Virus record (IMG/VR): IMGVR_UViG_3300017963_000188
Coordinates: 294,039-358,038 of that record
DNA: 64,000 bases
Strand: one strand, 5' to 3'
Shown here: positions 33,210 through 37,136 of the stretch, piece after piece
Numbering within the stretch: position 1 is the stretch's first letter
How the letters are laid out: each line of letters starts with the position of its first letter
Notes under the pieces: generated by a model
What the model was told of the DNA's origin: nothing
What the model saw: only the letters and a program-made list of their open reading frames with translations
Database searches by the model: none
Program-made: the position numbers and the translations under genes

Positions 33210-33286
33210 CCGGATGTAGCTCAGTTGGATAGAGCACTGGCCTACGAAGTCAGGGGTCGCAGGTTCGAATCCTGCCATTCGGGCCA
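33210..33286 (+). tRNA. tRNA-Arg(ACG)
   Basis: Full cloverleaf: acceptor CCGGATG/CATTCGG, D arm GCTC/GAGC, anticodon arm CTGGC-CTACGAA-GTCAG, T loop TTCGAAT, G73 + CCA. Confidence 0.95.
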
Positions 33287-33402
33287 AAAACTCTAAATAT
33301 AGAGTTTCTATGTTTGCACATAAAAATAAATGTAGCGTAACATAGAGTGTTTGATGAAGGAGAGAAAAAGACCTGAAGGAGAAAGGGATGTAGGAGAAGA
33401 CA

Positions 33403-35085
33403 ATGGCACGTTTCAACCAGAGTACGACAGCAGGGCAAAGGCTCCGTAAGGACCCAACCGCAACCAAGAACCACGAGGGTGGACTTGCATTCACTCCCAC
33501 ACCGGAACTGGAGCTATATCTCAGAGCATGTACTTCATTGCTCGAAGATAAGTTCTACACCAAGGGGAGTAAGGAGCGGAAAGACATTCAAGCCCTGCTA
33601 GGCAAGGTAGACCGTAAGTATGTGCTTCAACTAGCGGCATATGTCCGTAATGAGATGAAGCTCAGGTCATTGCCTGTCATGCTTCTGGCTGAGGCTGCTC
33701 GTATGCCTTCCAAGGAGCTTCAGGCTCAGGTTGTGGAACTTGTGGGAGCATATAAGTCTGATCCAAGCCTGGAGAACTTCAATGCTCTGGTAGAGTTCAT
33801 GACCAATCATGAGCATAGTAATGGAGTCCTGAGCAAGCTCAGGACTTCAGCTCCAGAGGATACAAGCAAGAACCTGCCACTGATCAAGAAGTATGTTCAG
33901 TGGCTGAATGATGGTCGTGAGCCCAAGAAGGATGTCAAGCAGTATGCTCCAAAAATCATCCAAAGGGCTGATGAGCCAGCAGAGGCTCTGGCATATTGGA
34001 CCAGTGTGTTTGGGTCCAAGGCAAAGCTACCAAATGCTCTCAAGAAGGGTTTGGCTGAAGCTCTGAGCAAGTTTGATGAATATCAGCTTGCAAAGTGGGA
34101 CAAGGGTGGTCGTGATATGAAGTTGCGAGATGTAATTCGTCTCGTACACCCTCGTCCAAATGATCAAGAGAGAGCAGCTCTTTATAAGAGGGCTATCGAG
34201 GGTGAACTGAAGACTCCAGAAACTTGGGAGGTCAAGATCTCTGGTGGTGGTTCAACATCTGAGAACTGGGGTGAGATTGCACCTAAGATGGGGACCATGG
34301 CTCTGCTCAGGAATCTCAGGAACTTTGAGCAGAAGGGTGCTCAGAAGGCTCTGGCAGAAGCTAAGCGTCGATTCAGGGACCCTGAAGCTGTTCAGAAGAG
34401 TCGTTTGCTACCATTCCGTTGGTACACTGCTTTGAAGCATGTGTCCAATTCTGATGTGGCAGATGCGGTTCGGGAGGCTATGGAGTTGTCTGTGGTAAAT
34501 CTTCCAAAGTGGAGAGGTTCCACAGCCATCTTCAGTGATAACTCTGGGTCAATGCATAGCCAGCTCTCTAGCAAGAGCACTGTGCAATATATCGAGATTG
34601 CTGGTGTGATGTCAGCACTAGCTCTCCATATGACTCAGGATGAATACCTGATCGGTGCTTTTGGTCAGACCTATAAGGATGTCAGCCTATCAAGGCGTGA
34701 TTCTGTTCTGACTAATGCTGGCAGGGTAGCTAATGCTCATGTTGGTCACAGTACCAATGCATATCTGGCTATCCAGAGTATCAGGAAGAGGAAGAAGAAG
34801 TTTGACAGAATCTTTATCTTCTCTGATATGCAGTGCTACGATACTTCTGGTGGTAGCTGGTACTCAGACCAGTCTCTGGCTGAGGAATGGAAGAAGTATC
34901 GTCAAGAAGTGAACTCAAAGGCTATGCTCTACTCTGTAGACTTGGCTGGATATGGGTCACTTCAATGGCCAGAGAATGACCGATCTGTGTATTTCCTTGC
35001 AGGCTGGTCTGAGAAGGTTCTTGACTTGGTAGAAGCCATCGAGAATCAGCACTCAGCAGTTGACCTGATCAAGGAGAGGTGGTAG
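33403..35085 (+). CDS. rsr: Ro60/Rsr-like TROVE-domain RNA-binding protein with C-terminal vWA
   Basis: N.EGG.AF, EDKFY, R.EM.LRS.P, IQRADE, KFDEYQLAKW, LRDV.RL.HP.P, TPETWE, MALLRNLRN, SRLLPFR, DNSGSM MIDAS, FSDMQ, DLAGYG, AGWSEK. Confidence 0.93.
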   Translation: MARFNQSTTAGQRLRKDPTATKNHEGGLAFTPTPELELYLRACTSLLEDKFYTKGSKERKDIQALLGKVDRKYVLQLAAYVRNEMKLRSLPVMLLAEAARMPSKELQAQVVELVGAYKSDPSLENFNALVEFMTNHEHSNGVLSKLRTSAPEDTSKNLPLIKKYVQWLNDGREPKKDVKQYAPKIIQRADEPAEALAYWTSVFGSKAKLPNALKKGLAEALSKFDEYQLAKWDKGGRDMKLRDVIRLVHPRPNDQERAALYKRAIEGELKTPETWEVKISGGGSTSENWGEIAPKMGTMALLRNLRNFEQKGAQKALAEAKRRFRDPEAVQKSRLLPFRWYTALKHVSNSDVADAVREAMELSVVNLPKWRGSTAIFSDNSGSMHSQLSSKSTVQYIEIAGVMSALALHMTQDEYLIGAFGQTYKDVSLSRRDSVLTNAGRVANAHVGHSTNAYLAIQSIRKRKKKFDRIFIFSDMQCYDTSGGSWYSDQSLAEEWKKYRQEVNSKAMLYSVDLAGYGSLQWPENDRSVYFLAGWSEKVLDLVEAIENQHSAVDLIKERW

Positions 35086-35089
35086 AAAC

Positions 35090-35167
35090 AAAGAGTGGCA
35101 GCGTAGGGAACGGTTACTTCGCTATAGGAAGCCCCCAGTTCCGTTCCCGACATCTCCTCCACTCTTT
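35090..35167 (+). ncRNA. Y-RNA-like unit 1 (minimal, no tRNA module)
   Basis: Stems AAAGAGTGG/CCACTCTTT and GGGAACGG/CCGTTCCC; conserved CAGCGTAG and TACTTCG; starts 4 nt after the Ro60 stop. Confidence 0.75.
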
Positions 35168-35182
35168 AACTAAACAAGGTAA

Positions 35183-35254
35183 GAGCAGCAGCGTAGGTGA
35201 CGGATACTTCGACCATTGAAACGAAAAACCCCGTCACTAATATCTTCTCTGCTC
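35183..35254 (+). ncRNA. Y-RNA-like unit 2 (minimal, no tRNA module)
   Basis: Stems GAGCAG/CTGCTC and GGTGACGG/CCGTCACT; same conserved motifs. Confidence 0.75.
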
Positions 35255-35269
35255 AATTAACACACAAAG

Positions 35270-35403
35270 GAGCAGCAGCGTAGGTAACAGTTACTTCGTT
35301 TATTGGTTCAAATCCAATTTTTTCCGAATGGAAAGATAGCCTAATTGGTAAGGCAAGTCCTGTTCAGGCAGGGTTAGAACTGTTATCGACCCTTTCTCTG
35401 CTC
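35270..35403 (+). ncRNA. Y-RNA-like unit 3 with permuted tRNA module (T arm, acceptor, D arm, extra hairpin; Ser-like acceptor)
   Basis: Scaffold GGTAACAG/CTGTTATC; ATTGG-TTCAAAT-CCAAT; TTTTTCC-GAAT-GGAAAGA; TAGCCTAATTGGTAAGGCA. Confidence 0.8.
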
Positions 35404-35421
35404 GTTAAATAAAGGAGAATC

Positions 35422-35779: not shown

Positions 35780-35920
35780 AGGCAGCAGCGTAGAGATCGG
35801 ATACTTCGCTAAAGGAGCGGGTGGTTGCAGGTTCAAGTCCTGCTGTCCTGACTATGGTCAGGACATAGCTCAATTGGCAGAGCACCTAAACGTAACCCGA
35901 TTTCGACTTCTTCTCTGCCT
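35780..35920 (+). ncRNA. Y-RNA-like unit 6 with permuted tRNA-Pro-like body (degenerate anticodon loop, CTA end)
   Basis: TTCGC-TAAAGGA-GCGGG, GCAGG-TTCAAGT-CCTGC, TGTCCTG-A-CTA, CAGGACA-TA-GCTC..GAGC. Confidence 0.82.
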
Positions 35921-35934
35921 TTAACTTTGAAAGG

Positions 35935-36083
35935 AATGAGCAGCAGCGTAGCCAGCGGATACTTCGCATTTGACTATTAATCAAAAGGTTGCAGGTTCGA
36001 GTCCTGTCCGTCCCACCATTTATGGGACGGTAGCTCAATTGGTAGAGAAAAGAATCCCGTTAGCGACCCTTACTCTGCTCATT
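35935..36083 (+). ncRNA. Y-RNA-like unit 7 with permuted tRNA-Lys-like body (anticodon ATT)
   Basis: TTTGA-CTATTAA-TCAAA, GCAGG-TTCGAGT-CCTGT, CCGTCCC-A-CCA, linker TTTAT, GGGACGG-TA-GCTC. Confidence 0.85.
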
Positions 36084-36104
36084 ACTTTCATTTTGGAGAT
36101 AACA

Positions 36105-36374
36105 ATGGATGGTATCTTCGAAAGTTTTGGGTCCCCAAGACCTGAACCCAAACATAAGCCCGTACCTGTTGATTATGAGACTCAGTACAATCAACTGAAG
36201 AATGCAGTTCAGGATCTTTTGTGTGAACTTAGAATCAGACCACAGGATTTAGATGCTATGGTGGGAGGATATAGTCCTGATTATCCTGGTGGTCCTGGTT
36301 GGAATACTGGGGGATCTACTTGTAAGGTTCAATTGTCTCAAATCGTAGCTAGAAAATTGTCACCTCATGTTTAG
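36105..36374 (+). CDS. Small hypothetical protein between Y-RNA units 7 and 8
   Basis: GGAG RBS before ATG 36105 (MDGIFESF...); the upstream part of the listed ORF overlaps ncRNA. Confidence 0.55.
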   Translation: MDGIFESFGSPRPEPKHKPVPVDYETQYNQLKNAVQDLLCELRIRPQDLDAMVGGYSPDYPGGPGWNTGGSTCKVQLSQIVARKLSPHV

Positions 36375-36379
36375 GGTAT

Positions 36380-36511
36380 GAGCAGCAGCGCAGATGACAG
36401 TTACTTCGGATAAAGCATTGGTCTCATACACCAAGGATACAGGTTCAAATCCTGTCACTCTGAAAAGAGTAGTAGCTAAATACAATACTGTTATCGTCCC
36501 CTCCTCTGCTC
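36380..36511 (+). ncRNA. Y-RNA-like unit 8 with permuted tRNA (anticodon CAT) opened in the D loop; acceptor closed by a GAAA tetraloop
   Basis: Scaffold GATGACAG/CTGTTATC; GGATAAAGCA, TTGGT-CTCATAC-ACCAA, ACAGG-TTCAAAT-CCTGT, ACTCT-GAAA-AGAGT, TAGCT. Confidence 0.8.
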
Positions 36512-36540
36512 TGACTCCATCTATAGATTATGTTAAAATC

Positions 36541-36867
36541 ATGACAGATCGTATAACCAAACAACTTTTGGATGCTAATCGAGAAGATCATAGATTTTTC
36601 CTGTCCTTAGAAGAAGACAGGGTGAAAGAGGCTAAAAGGGCTGCACTGTATAAAAGAGCATTAAAGGTGTGGTATCAATATCATATTGATTTGGTGTTGA
36701 TAGATCCTAATTTATCTCCTAAACATAGAAGTTTTGATACTTTATCCTCAAAATCAGCATTAAAAGCTCTTGAACTTTTGAAACAAGTAGATAAAGATAA
36801 CTGGGATATCCCAGAAGATATCATGAACAGGGCATTCAAAGAGGTATGGGACGAACAGCTACAATAA
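36541..36867 (+). CDS. Hypothetical protein
   Basis: Start moved to MTDRITK after the ncRNA. Confidence 0.5.
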   Translation: MTDRITKQLLDANREDHRFFLSLEEDRVKEAKRAALYKRALKVWYQYHIDLVLIDPNLSPKHRSFDTLSSKSALKALELLKQVDKDNWDIPEDIMNRAFKEVWDEQLQ

Positions 36868-37136
36868 CTTTTCTAACTCATTTTGAGGGTGGTAGACGAG
36901 AACCTCCTAATTTGGGTAAGTATTGCACCATAGTCAAATTTCCAGAACAACAAGATCCTGAGCACCCATATGGTCAATGGTCATTGATCATGAATTTCAT
37001 AGAAAAATCTGGTCTGGTATTCAAAGCCCAGATTCGTTTCTTAATGGATGAAGCACCACATGAGTTGATTTACACGGGAAATACCTTTGATGTTTATGAA
37101 GGTCCATTTTTAGTGGCTCATGGTGTTGTAAACTAA
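36846..37136 (+). CDS. Stand-alone EF-Tu domain III-like beta-barrel protein
   Basis: A.ITFL..FEGGR..P near the N-terminus and G..F...EG..LVA.GVV at the C-terminus resemble EF-Tu EEGGRHTP...GLRFAIREGGRTVGAGVV. Confidence 0.55.
   Translation: MGRTATITFLTHFEGGRREPPNLGKYCTIVKFPEQQDPEHPYGQWSLIMNFIEKSGLVFKAQIRFLMDEAPHELIYTGNTFDVYEGPFLVAHGVVN

What the first reader, a model, noticed from the sequence alone, without database searches (positions are those of the whole stretch)
33210..37136. Phage Ro60 locus followed by an array of eight Y-RNA-like genes loaded with different permuted tRNAs
Seen: 4 nt after the Ro60/TROVE stop begins a tandem series of 8 units (35090, 35183, 35270, 35422, 35621, 35780, 35935, 36380). 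Each has an outer stem, CAGCG(T/C)AG, an 8-bp inner stem, (A/T)TACTTCG, a variable insert, the inner stem complement, a pyrimidine-rich internal loop and the outer stem complement. The inner stem covaries: GGGAACGG/CCGTTCCC, GGTGACGG/CCGTCACT, GGTAACAG/CTGTTATC, GAGGACGG/CCGTTTTC, GATGACAG/CTGTTATC, GAGATCGG/CCGATTTC, GCCAGCGG/CCGTTAGC. Six inserts are tRNA 3' parts followed by tRNA 5' parts. Known: bacterial Ro60 (Rsr) genes sit next to Y RNAs, YrlA RNAs mimic tRNA with T, acceptor and D elements, and Salmonella has rsr-yrlBA-rtcBA. Those loci usually carry one or two Y RNAs with the Ro-binding stem in place of the anticodon arm. Inference: this phage uses a constant Ro60-binding handle with interchangeable tRNA cargo, giving a repertoire of tRNA-shaped RNPs. 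They could act as decoys or substrates against host anticodon nucleases and tRNA-sensing defences, or as protected tRNA precursors.
Basis: partly seen in the sequence, partly recalled or inferred. Interest (0 to 1): 0.95.

Follow-up and report, generated by a model that had tools for sequence, protein, structure and literature searches.

The report
Phage Ro60 with eight Y-RNA genes
A large phage carries a Ro60 RNA-binding protein gene followed by eight small RNA genes that share one probable Ro60-binding stem but carry different tRNA look-alike bodies; this is an expanded, more tRNA-complete version of the known bacterial and phage YrlA-type Y RNAs.

Summary
A TROVE+vWA Ro60 gene (33403-35085) is followed 4 nt later by eight same-strand units. 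Each has a covarying outer stem, CAGCGYAG, a covarying 8-bp inner stem, WTACTTCG, a variable insert and the complementary 3' strand. Two units are short. Six carry a T arm, acceptor stem and D arm in YrlA order.

The units are YrlA-class Y RNAs. They give sub-threshold Rfam YrlA hits. A covariance model built here finds all eight, and more than 100 relatives beside Ro60 genes on the Ro60 strand. In 49 long relatives 96.7% of modelled pairs form, against 60.4% in shuffles.

Arrays are not unique to this window. Relatives carry 2-5 units, and Caulobacter phage CcrColossus carries eight that are not annotated as Y RNAs. Three features go beyond published YrlA descriptions:
- Array size.
- An anticodon-arm look-alike built on the invariant UUCG.
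- Three units with a 7-bp acceptor stem, N73, an encoded CCA and a U-rich linker. Unit 4, un-permuted in silico, is a perfect tRNA-Gly(UCC) cloverleaf.

Ro60 binding, processing and any anti-defence role are inferred, not shown. RtcB lies 2.3 kb downstream of the array, but this linkage is absent from 91 related loci. Verdict: a new variant of a known kind, of moderate to high interest.

The parts
33210..33286 (+). Canonical tRNA-Arg(ACG) with encoded CCA, 116 nt upstream of the Ro60 start codon
   Evidence: ARAGORN. Rfam tRNA, 66.2 bits.
33403..35085 (+). Ro60/Rsr-like protein, 560 aa (TROVE ring plus vWA domain)
   Evidence: Pfam TROVE 60.3 bits and vWA_Ro60 33.8 bits, both above their cut-offs. 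Best PDB sequence match is Thermus phage phiLo Ro60 (9KOP/9L5Y), E 2e-36.
35090..35167 (+). Unit 1: short Y RNA, the handle plus a small hairpin built on the UUCG motif (35117-35131). No tRNA body.
   Evidence: R1 49.1 bits; not in the training set.
35183..35254 (+). Unit 2: short Y RNA, the handle plus a UUCG/CGAA hairpin (35208-35225)
   Evidence: R1 44.5 bits; not in the training set.
35270..35403 (+). Unit 3: tRNA-like Y RNA with a closed 7-bp acceptor hairpin (GAAU loop) and an extra hairpin after the D arm (35356-35375). No hairpin precedes the T arm.
   Evidence: R1 94 bits.
35422..35565 (+). Unit 4: the handle plus a complete permuted tRNA. Anticodon-like arm 35449-35465 (loop CUUCCAU), AGGUC, T arm 35471-35487, acceptor 3' strand 35488-35494, UCCA 35495-35498, GUAU linker, acceptor 5' strand 35503-35509, D arm 35512-35527.
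   Evidence: Rfam YrlA 37.3 bits. R1 121.7 bits. ARAGORN calls the un-permuted form tRNA-Gly(UCC), 76 nt.
35621..35763 (+). Unit 5: classical YrlA layout, with an anticodon-stem analogue (AAAGG/CCUUU) running into the handle. 7-bp acceptor, then ACCA (35692-35695) and a UUUAU linker.
   Evidence: Rfam YrlA 36.5 bits. R1 115.8 bits.
35780..35920 (+). Unit 6: the handle, a hairpin on UUCG (35805-35821, loop UAAAGGA), a T arm, a closed 9-bp acceptor hairpin and a D arm
   Evidence: Rfam YrlA 37.5 bits. R1 116.1 bits.
35935..36083 (+). Unit 7: the handle, a separate anticodon-like arm (35969-35985, loop CUAUUAA), AGGUU, a T arm, a 7-bp acceptor, ACCA (36015-36018), a UUUAU linker and a D arm
   Evidence: R1 109.7 bits. 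ARAGORN gives a 75-nt cloverleaf for the un-permuted form.
36105..36374 (+). ORF of 89 aa that interrupts the array. No Pfam family; GGAG lies 8 nt upstream of its ATG.
   Evidence: No homologue in related loci.
36380..36511 (+). Unit 8: the handle, a C(UUCG)G hairpin, an anticodon-like arm (36418-36434, loop CUCAUAC), a T arm and an acceptor hairpin closed by GAAA. The D arm is degenerate.
   Evidence: Rfam tRNA 32.3 bits. R1 65.5 bits..
36541..37136 (+). Two small overlapping ORFs (108 aa and 96 aa) of unknown function at the end of the flagged interval
   Evidence: no Pfam family. (not conserved in relatives).
38815..40128 (+). RtcB RNA ligase, 2.3 kb downstream of the last unit
   Evidence: Pfam RtcB, E 4.5e-63. 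Linkage to Ro60 is not conserved in relatives.

Best explanation
The locus encodes a phage Ro60 (Rsr-like) protein and, probably on the same transcript, eight Y RNAs of the YrlA class: two short and six tRNA-like.

Each RNA closes its 5' and 3' ends into a constant bulged helix, here called the handle. Its parts are an outer stem, the motif AGCGUAG, an 8-bp inner stem and then WUACUUCG. By homology with the published Rsr-binding motif, this handle is the Ro60 docking site (inferred).

The insert is a tRNA body in permuted order: anticodon-like arm, 5-nt variable loop, T arm, acceptor and D arm. It should fold into an L shape recognised by tRNA-handling proteins (inferred).

Units 4, 5 and 7 have a 7-bp acceptor stem, N73, an encoded CCA and a U-rich linker ending in U(-1). 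They are expected to be nicked by RNase P and trimmed to CCA, as shown experimentally for M. smegmatis YrlA. That would give two-piece RNAs with a free tRNA-like acceptor end (inferred). Units 3, 6 and 8 keep a closed acceptor hairpin.

The resulting set of Ro60 RNPs most likely acts as adaptors. They would couple Ro60 to host or phage RNA-processing or repair enzymes during infection, such as PNPase-type exonucleases, tRNA-binding enzymes and possibly RtcB. The diversified bodies would give different partner or target specificities (inferred).
For: Ro60 identity:
- Pfam TROVE and vWA_Ro60, both above their cut-offs.
- PDB sequence match to phiLo Ro60, E 2e-36. That protein binds phage Y-like RNAs and forms a complex with host PNPase (PMC12135203).

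RNA class:
- Rfam YrlA hits to units 4-7, E 3e-6 to 3.5e-4.
- The units lie on the same strand as Ro60 and within 1.5 kb of it, which is the criterion used in PMC4201824.

Structure:
- RNAalifold on 21 long units gives 32 pairs (outer stem, inner stem, T, acceptor and D). 28 of them show compensatory changes.
- On 49 long units, 96.7% of cells pair against 60.4% in shuffles. There are 576 double-change cells and 0 of 500 shuffles reach the observed values. Slid controls pair at 40-47%.
- Strand control: 79 of 143 TACTTCG sites on the Ro60 strand have at least 13 of 14 handle pairs, against 0 of 46 on the opposite strand.

Distribution:
- At E <= 1e-3, 192 matches in 91 related loci, all but one on the Ro60 strand.
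- The same family occurs in CcrColossus, Xanthomonas phage Tenjo and a Brevundimonas phage, and in non-permuted form in crAss001 and HGTV-1.

Handle motif:
- Variants in the family (GGUGAAG, GGUGUAG, AGCGUAG) grade into GNCGAAN0-1G (PMC4201824).

Processing:
- Exact NCCA sits directly after a 7-bp acceptor in three units.
- No terminator-like site was found on the + strand between Ro60 and the end of the array.
Against: - No expression, processing or binding data exist for this phage.
- The Rfam YrlA scores (about 37 bits) are well below the gathering score of 69.
- The handle motif departs from GNCGAAN0-1G at two positions.
- The experimentally validated phiLo Yrl1 and Yrl2 are not detected by model R1. 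No member of this exact RNA subfamily has therefore been shown to bind a Ro60.
- The effector is unknown even for canonical YrlA (10.1101/312249).
- An 89-aa ORF and a 296-nt gap separate unit 8 from the rest, so a single operon is not certain.
Confidence: 0.8

Rival explanations
1. Decoy or sacrificial-substrate model. The Ro60-tethered tRNA look-alikes present anticodon-like loops and acceptor ends. These soak up or report host tRNA-targeting defence nucleases, and the nicked RNAs are resealed by the phage RtcB or the second RNA ligase.
For: - The hairpin before the T arm has a 5-bp stem and a 7-nt loop. In 17 distinct family loops read, 14 have U at loop position 2, all 17 have a purine at position 6, and 15 have A at position 7. 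This matches the anticodon-loop pattern.
- The loop triplets vary: UCC, CAU and AUU in the window; GUU, GUC, GUG, UGU and GCU in relatives.
- The window encodes RtcB (38815-40128) and an Rnl-type RNA ligase (61030-62076).
- A Ro60-like protein of phage Bas63, encoded next to tRNA genes, counters the ppl defence system (PMC11482910).
- Jumbo-phage TROVE proteins have been assigned to RNA repair (PMC7824862).
Against: - This is purely inferential.
- RtcB is not linked to Ro60 in any of 91 related loci.
- Several loops recur unchanged in unrelated lineages (CUAUUAA in four, CUGUUAA in three). A second class ends in GGA. Both look more like conserved protein-binding motifs than copies of host anticodons.
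- Units 1, 2, 3 and 5 lack a convincing anticodon loop.
- The loops would lack the modified bases that several anticodon nucleases are known to need (my own knowledge).
Confidence: 0.18
2. Permuted tRNA precursor model. Units 4 and 7 are circularly permuted tRNA genes. The handle is excised, the ends at the 26/27 junction are ligated (by RtcB or Rnl), and RNase P plus 3' trimming release functional tRNAs.
For: - ARAGORN accepts un-permuted unit 4 as a 76-nt tRNA-Gly(UCC) with CCA. It carries G1:C72, C2:G71, G3:C70, U73, C35 and C36, which is the E. coli glycine identity set as I recall it.
- ARAGORN also accepts un-permuted unit 7 as a 75-nt cloverleaf.
- Two RNA ligases are encoded in the window.
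- Only one canonical tRNA gene is found in the 64 kb.
Against: - At most two or three of the eight units could yield a tRNA. Units 3, 6 and 8 have closed acceptor hairpins, unit 5 has no anticodon loop, and the unit 7 triplet AUU is not a normal anticodon.
- By inspection, the handle shows no bulge-helix-bulge motif of the kind used by known permuted tRNA genes.
- The handle is conserved with a Ro-type motif next to Ro60 genes in more than 50 loci, so it is not a disposable spacer.
- In CcrColossus the acceptor (G3:U70, A73) and the loop triplet (CUG) of the CCA-bearing unit disagree in identity.
Confidence: 0.05
3. Non-functional repeats: decayed tandem tRNA genes, or a repeat family with no RNA role.
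For: The units are tandem and contain tRNA-like pieces. YrlA RNAs have been proposed to derive from dimeric tRNA transcripts (10.1101/312249).
Against: - Compensatory changes maintain five helices across 49 sequences.
- The motifs are invariant over Ro60 proteins only 27-52% identical.
- Strand and position relative to Ro60 are strictly kept.
Confidence: 0.02

Closest known systems
YrlA Y RNAs of S. Typhimurium and other bacteria (Rfam RF02553; PMC4201824; structure in 10.1101/312249)
   Same: - Encoded beside Ro60/Rsr on the same strand.
- The 5' and 3' ends form the Ro-binding helix.
- The internal T arm, acceptor stem-loop and D arm come in the same order.
- A YUAY-type motif precedes a stem-loop upstream of the T arm.
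- G18/G19 and the T-loop consensus are present.
   Different: - The scores reach only about 37 bits against the Rfam gathering score of 69.
- The handle motif is AGCGUAG rather than GNCGAAN0-1G.
- An invariant UACUUCG is present.
- The 'V' stem-loop looks like an anticodon arm followed by a class-I 5-nt variable loop.
- Three units encode a free CCA end, which S. Typhimurium YrlA lacks.
- There are eight genes instead of one or two.
M. smegmatis YrlA/YrlB (PMC4201824)
   Same: - A 7-bp acceptor stem.
- RNase P cleavage and a CCA end that give a two-piece Y RNA.
- A second, shorter Y RNA processed from the same precursor.
   Different: - Here the CCA is genome-encoded, followed by a 4-5 nt U-rich linker. 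In M. smegmatis an extra CA is added after cleavage.
- Three such units occur in one array.
- The array lies downstream, not upstream, of Ro60.
Caulobacter phage CcrColossus TROVE locus (JX100810; listed among phages with Y-like RNAs according to PMC12135203)
   Same: - The same RNA family and handle.
- Eight tandem units next to the TROVE gene.
- One unit carries ACCA after a 7-bp acceptor stem, and one carries the CUGUUAA loop.
   Different: - The units lie upstream of the gene.
- The record annotates only a 'tRNA-Gln' inside one unit.
- The Ro60 proteins are about 36% identical over half the protein.
- No RtcB is annotated within the 4 kb fetched on each side.
Thermus phage phiLo Ro60 with Yrl1/Yrl2 (PMC12135203; PDB 9KOP, 9L5Y)
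   Same: - A phage Ro60 with adjacent Y-like RNAs.
- It is the closest solved structure by sequence.
- RNA binding and a ternary complex with host PNPase were shown experimentally.
   Different: - The phiLo RNAs are not detected by model R1.
- They are described as stem-bulge-stem RNAs with a CGAA motif, not as tRNA mimics.
- There are two RNAs, located upstream of the gene.
Circularly permuted tRNA genes of Cyanidioschyzon merolae and Thermofilum (from my own knowledge)
   Same: The 3' half of the tRNA precedes the 5' half, joined through CCA or a linker. The termini pair with each other.
   Different: - Those termini form a bulge-helix-bulge motif that is cut and ligated to give a functional tRNA.
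- Here the termini form a conserved Ro-type handle, and most units cannot yield a tRNA.
b7a-tRNA next to Band-7 and RtcB (Burroughs and Aravind 2016, as summarised in 10.1101/312249)
   Same: A tRNA-like non-coding RNA associated with RNA-repair genes, occasionally found next to Rsr. The non-permuted relatives in crAss001 lie about 1.6 kb from a band-7/SPFH gene.
   Different: No Band-7 gene was found among the window proteins I scanned. The window units are permuted and carry the Ro-type handle.

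Membership tests
Ro60/Rsr protein | TROVE (HEAT-repeat ring) domain | tested here: met
   Pfam PF05731, 60.3 bits against a cut-off of 23.
Ro60/Rsr protein | C-terminal Ro60-type vWA domain | tested here: met
   Pfam PF25045, 33.8 bits against a cut-off of 27.7.
Ro60/Rsr protein | Sequence relationship to an experimentally characterised Ro60 | tested here: met
   phmmer against the PDB: phiLo Ro60 (9KOP/9L5Y), E 2e-36 over residues 174-548.
Ro60/Rsr protein | Binds Y RNA on the outer ring surface | not testable with these tools
   Needs EMSA or RIP.
YrlA-class Y RNA | Encoded within about 4 kb of Ro60 on the same strand (criterion of PMC4201824) | tested here: met
   All eight units lie 4-1430 nt downstream of the stop codon, on the + strand.
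YrlA-class Y RNA | Reaches the Rfam RF02553 gathering score | tested here: not met
   Best score 37.5 bits against 69. E is 3e-6 in a 1.6-kb search. Relatives in other phages score 38-56 bits.
YrlA-class Y RNA | Internal T arm, acceptor-like stem-loop and D arm, in that order, with a tRNA-type T loop and G18/G19 | tested here: met
   Met by units 3-7, and partly by unit 8 (no D arm). Not met by units 1 and 2.
YrlA-class Y RNA | 5' motif GNCGAAN0-1G in the terminal helix | tested here: inconclusive
   The window has AGCGUAG (AGCGCAG in unit 8), which matches 4 of the 6 specified positions (3 in unit 8). Family variants include GGUGAAG, one change from the motif.
YrlA-class Y RNA | Conserved YUAY preceding the V region | tested here: met
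   WUAC of the invariant WUACUUCG sits directly before the hairpin upstream of the T arm. With W = A the first base is a purine.
YrlA-class Y RNA | Helices supported by covariation | tested here: met
   29 of 32 pairs show double changes. 96.7% of cells pair against 60.4% in shuffles. That alignment is fitted to the model; the independent MAFFT/RNAalifold result is similar.
YrlA-class Y RNA | Bound by the cognate Ro60 in vivo | not testable with these tools
   Needs RIP-seq or EMSA.
Canonical tRNA gene | Contiguous cloverleaf detected by tRNA finders | tested here: not met
   ARAGORN finds only tRNA-Arg at 33210. Rfam tRNA gives partial hits of about 32 bits in units 7 and 8.
Circularly permuted tRNA gene | The 3' half precedes the 5' half, and the rejoined sequence is a valid cloverleaf | tested here: met
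   Met for units 4, 6 and 7 only. ARAGORN on the un-permuted sequences gives Gly(UCC), 'Leu(AAG)' with A33, and 'Asn(AUU)'. Unit 8 fails.
Circularly permuted tRNA gene | Termini form a bulge-helix-bulge splice motif | tested here: not met
   By inspection of the folds, the handle has 1/3, 1/2 and 1/1 internal loops between 2-bp steps, not a 3-4-3 bulge-helix-bulge.

The most novel reading that the evidence does not exclude
The array is a repertoire of Ro60-tethered, nearly complete tRNAs. Each has an anticodon-like arm, and some have a processed CCA end that may be aminoacylatable; unit 4 carries the full glycine identity set. In this reading the RNAs act as baits, sensors or sacrificial substrates for tRNA-directed host defence nucleases, with phage RNA ligases resealing them. 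This would be a new anti-defence principle and would give the long-unknown YrlA tRNA-like domain a function.
Probability: 0.15. Interest if true: 0.85.

Novelty: new variant of a known kind. Interest (0 to 1): 0.6.

Why it matters
The effector and purpose of the tRNA-like domain of bacterial Y RNAs are still unknown (10.1101/312249). This locus matters for three reasons.

1. It offers natural variation. One phage Ro60 is paired with eight RNAs that keep the handle and vary the acceptor stem, the acceptor end (open or closed) and the anticodon-like loop. That is a ready-made panel for finding which tRNA-binding proteins are recruited.

2. Units with real acceptor stems, an encoded CCA, a U-rich spacer and a retained anticodon arm look like snapshots of the proposed origin of YrlA from dimeric tRNA transcripts.

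3. The family defined here is missed by the Rfam gathering threshold and is mis-annotated in reference genomes: as 'tRNA-Gln' in CcrColossus and as 'tRNA-Asp + intron' in HGTV-1. Phage tRNA counts and Ro60 loci therefore need re-reading. CcrColossus offers a cultured system for testing.

Tried and rejected
I used Ro60-anchored loci instead.
- MAFFT on all eight units misaligned the 3' end of unit 1. I used the long units only and the covariance model.
- My first regular-expression parser had a high chance rate: at least 7 of 8 pairs with G-U allowed is expected about once per 200 nt. I replaced it with a joint 14-pair criterion and an opposite-strand control.
- A bulge-helix-bulge reading of the handle was rejected by inspection.
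- I expected RtcB, MoxR, vWA or the small ORFs to travel with Ro60. tblastn found none of them in 91 related loci, and the Rnl-type ligase in only one, L081.
- I expected the experimentally validated phiLo Yrl1 and Yrl2 to match model R1. They do not.
- No close DNA relative exists in GenBank phages; only tRNA-like fragments match.
- The two Y RNA reviews (PMC10870794, PMC6542706) and the supplement of PMC4201824 are not held. I cannot exclude that multi-unit arrays are mentioned there.
- The Pfam scans of the neighbouring ORFs were uninformative.

Full report
**1. What is in the sequence**

The ORF 33403-35085 (+) encodes a 560-aa protein. It matches Pfam TROVE (60.3 bits) and the Ro60-type vWA domain (33.8 bits), both above their curated cut-offs. 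Its best match among solved structures is the Ro60 of Thermus phage phiLo (E 2e-36).

A canonical tRNA-Arg(ACG) with encoded CCA lies at 33210-33286.

Four nucleotides after the Ro60 stop codon, the first of eight units begins. CAGCGYAG occurs at 35099, 35189, 35276, 35430, 35627, 35786, 35944 and 36386. It occurs only once elsewhere in the window, on the other strand. Each copy is followed exactly 15 nt later by WTACTTCG.

Folding each unit gives one common handle:
- an outer stem of 6-9 bp;
- two 2-bp steps facing a pyrimidine-rich 3' strand;
- an 8-bp inner stem.

Spacers between units 1-7 are 14-55 nt. Unit 8 follows after a 296-nt gap that holds an 89-aa ORF.

**2. The inserts**

- Units 1 and 2 (72-78 nt) carry only a small hairpin that starts in the UUCG of the constant motif.
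- Units 3-8 (132-149 nt) carry a T arm, an acceptor helix and a D arm in that order. The D arm of unit 8 is degenerate.
- In units 4, 5 and 7 the acceptor helix is 7 bp. Its 3' strand is followed by N73 and CCA (UCCA, ACCA, ACCA). A 4-5 nt linker ending in U comes next, and then the 5' strand. The chance of an exact CCA at that position three times is about 4e-6.
- Units 3, 6 and 8 have acceptor hairpins closed by 4-nt loops.
- Units 4, 6, 7 and 8 have a 5-bp stem with a 7-nt loop before the T arm. The loops are CUUCCAU, UAAAGGA, CUAUUAA and CUCAUAC. A 4-5 nt stretch follows (AGGUC, UGGUU, AGGUU, GGAU); AGGUC and AGGUU match the class-I tRNA variable loop.
- In units 4 and 6 the 5' strand of that stem is the invariant UUCG itself.
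- In unit 5 a 5-bp anticodon-stem analogue runs into the handle. This is the classical YrlA layout.
- Unit 3 instead has a hairpin after the D arm.

I rejoined position 26 to position 27 in silico. ARAGORN then calls unit 4 a 76-nt tRNA-Gly(UCC) ending in CCA, unit 7 a 75-nt cloverleaf with triplet AUU, and unit 6 a cloverleaf with A33. Unit 8 fails. Which linker bases to drop in that exercise was my choice.

**3. What class of RNA this is**

- At relaxed thresholds, Rfam's YrlA model matches units 4, 5 and 6 end to end (about 37 bits, E 3e-6 to 6e-6) and part of unit 7. These scores are below the gathering score of 69.
- The permuted T-acceptor-D order is the published YrlA architecture, not something new. 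So are the placement beside Ro60, a YUAY-type motif ahead of a stem-loop upstream of the T arm, and a 5' Rsr-binding motif GNCGAAN0-1G (PMC4201824).
- M. smegmatis YrlA has a 7-bp acceptor stem. It is cut by RNase P and carries CCA in vivo (PMC4201824). This is a direct precedent for units 4, 5 and 7.
- S. [quoted passage not shown]

**4. Comparative evidence**

Searches anchored on Ro60 returned:
- the same contig (100% identity; records of 186 and 358 kb);
- 12 viral and 79 metagenomic loci with Ro60 27-47% identical;
- 13 genome or MAG loci, the closest at 52% identity in a cyanobacterial MAG.

TACTTCG is enriched on the Ro60 strand: 161 sites against 46, with about 42 expected by chance. 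Of the 143 Ro60-strand sites parsed (the window's duplicate copies were left out), 79 have at least 13 of 14 pairs in the two handle stems at the right geometry. None of the 46 opposite-strand sites does.

A MAFFT alignment of 21 long units gave an RNAalifold consensus of 32 pairs: outer stem, inner stem, T arm, a 7-bp acceptor and D arm. Of these, 28 show compensatory changes.

The covariance model R1 built from that alignment gave these results:
- It finds all eight window units, including the untrained units 1 and 2.
- It finds 192 matches in the 91 related loci, all but one on the Ro60 strand.
- On 49 long matches, 96.7% of cells pair against 60.4% after shuffling and 40-47% after sliding. 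There are 576 double-change cells.

This alignment is fitted to the model, so it leans towards the structure. The independent alignment agrees with it.

The handle 5' motif varies as GGUGAAG, GGUGUAG, ACUGUAG, AGUGUAG and AGCGUAG. It is therefore a graded variant of GNCGAAN0-1G.

**5. Arrays are a family trait**

In non-redundant loci at E <= 1e-4, the largest tandem run has these sizes:

| Units in run | Loci |
|---|---|
| 1 | 26 |
| 2 | 15 |
| 3 | 5 |
| 4 | 6 |
| 5 | 1 |
| 7 | 1 (CcrColossus) |
| 8 | 1 (the window) |

Many contigs are truncated, so these are lower bounds.

Cultured viruses with the family:
- Caulobacter phage CcrColossus has eight units at E <= 0.1, directly upstream of its TROVE gene. 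One unit overlaps an annotated 'tRNA-Gln'. Another has a G3:U70 acceptor, ACCA and a spacer hairpin.
- Xanthomonas phage Tenjo has three units and a Brevundimonas jumbo phage has four.
- In crAss001, in the haloarchaeal virus HGTV-1 and in metagenomic locus L005, the same motifs occur in non-permuted form. The RNA ends lie at the acceptor stem, and the handle is a hairpin inserted between the D arm and the anticodon-like arm. HGTV-1 annotates this RNA as 'tRNA-Asp + intron'.
- The family also occurs in bacterial genomes and MAGs.

All family members tested score below the Rfam YrlA threshold. I found no paper that describes such arrays, but two reviews and one supplement could not be read.

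**6. The hairpin before the T arm**

Across the family this hairpin usually starts at the invariant UUCG and has a 7-nt loop. In 17 distinct loops read:
- 14 have U at loop position 2;
- all 17 have a purine at position 6;
- 15 have A at position 7.

This is the anticodon-loop pattern. Two classes appear:
- YU-NNN-AA: CUAUUAA in four lineages including unit 7, CUGUUAA in three, and also loops with GUC, GUG, GCU and UGU.
- A class ending in GGA.

PMC4201824 called this element a variable-arm-like 'V' stem-loop. Its 5-bp stem, 7-nt loop and following 5-nt AGGUC-type loop fit an anticodon arm better. However, the recurrence of identical loops in distant lineages suggests conserved recognition motifs rather than copies of host anticodons.

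**7. Context**

The window looks like part of a large phage genome. It encodes SNF2 helicases, DnaB, a family A DNA polymerase, an NAD-dependent DNA ligase and thymidine kinase.

- RtcB lies at 38815-40128, and an Rnl-type RNA ligase at 61030-62076. The arrangement recalls rsr-yrlBA-rtcBA.
- tblastn nevertheless found no RtcB in the DNA held for any of the 91 related loci, at most 6 kb to each side of Ro60.
- No + strand terminator-like site separates Ro60 from the array, and promoter-like sites are not enriched. Co-transcription is therefore plausible but not shown.
- The host is unknown. The best cultured Ro60 relative is archaeal-viral (HGTV-1, 36%). The best overall is in a cyanobacterial MAG (52%).

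**8. Mechanism**

Shown:
- Sequence, predicted structure, covariation, family membership at relaxed thresholds, and genomic association with Ro60.

Inferred:
- The handle docks Ro60.
- The bodies fold as tRNA-like L shapes.
- Units 4, 5 and 7 are nicked by RNase P and end in CCA.
- The RNPs couple Ro60 to RNA-processing or repair enzymes during infection.

Published support for a role in RNA decay or counter-defence:
- phiLo Ro60-Yrl forms a complex with host PNPase (PMC12135203).
- A Ro60-like protein of Bas63 counters the ppl defence (PMC11482910).
- Highly transcribed candidate Y RNAs lie upstream of an Rsr-like gene in a Listeria phage (PMC12282133).
- Jumbo-phage TROVE proteins have been assigned to RNA repair (PMC7824862).

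The decoy idea and the tRNA-precursor idea remain open, at roughly 0.18 and 0.05.

**9. Verdict**

It is an expanded, more tRNA-complete variant of a known system, not a new kind of system. The array size is matched in a published phage genome, and the eight diversified units make a useful panel of natural variants. Interest 0.6.

Noticed in passing
L018:2540-2797 (metagenome contig Ga0209342_10000238): An archaeal-type RNase P RNA (Rfam RF00373, 174 bits) and at least 12 tRNAs lie within 6 kb upstream of a Ro60 gene that is preceded by five Y-RNA-like units. The contig is either an archaeal chromosome fragment or an archaeal virus carrying RNase P RNA.
   Followed up: no
L095:1998-2129 (HGTV-1); L098:5390-5533 and about 5640-5790 (crAss001); L005:3560-3690: These are non-permuted relatives of the units: a tRNA with normal acceptor ends and the Ro-type handle as a hairpin between the D arm and the anticodon-like arm. 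HGTV-1 annotates its copy as 'tRNA-Asp + intron'. Both topologies therefore exist in one family.
   Followed up: partly
L096:2459-3652 (Caulobacter phage CcrColossus): Eight tandem Y-RNA-like units lie upstream of TROVE gp139 in a cultured phage. The record annotates only a 68-nt 'tRNA-Gln' (locus 2870-2937) and two terminators there.
   Followed up: partly
window 27073-29732: A bpMoxR-type AAA ATPase (PF20030, E 5e-57) is followed by a vWA protein. This gene pair is typical of MoxR-vWA conflict systems. It lies 3.7 kb upstream of Ro60, which has its own vWA domain.
   Followed up: no
window 61030-62076 and 38815-40128: One 64-kb stretch holds two RNA ligases of different chemistry: an Rnl-type ATP-dependent ligase with a PHA02142 OB domain, and RtcB.
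   Followed up: no
window 35574-35592: A 6-bp hairpin (UCACCU/AGGUGA, 7-nt U-rich loop) sits in the unusually long 55-nt spacer between units 4 and 5. No T-run follows it, so it is not terminator-like.
   Followed up: no
window 35168-35180, 35255-35266, 35404-35415, 35764-35775, 35921-35932: The first bases after most units share an A/U-rich UUAAC/UAAC-like motif. The bases before the outer stems are purine-rich (AAGGA). These may be processing signals.
   Followed up: no
window 55880-55949 (-): A weak full-length match to the Y-RNA model R1 (14.5 bits, E 0.09) lies on the opposite strand, far from Ro60. It is probably chance.
   Followed up: no
window 40221-42035: A 604-aa protein with collagen repeats, collagen-flanked surface repeats, DUF7151 and a receptor-L-like domain lies directly after RtcB. 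It may be a fibre or adhesin.
   Followed up: no
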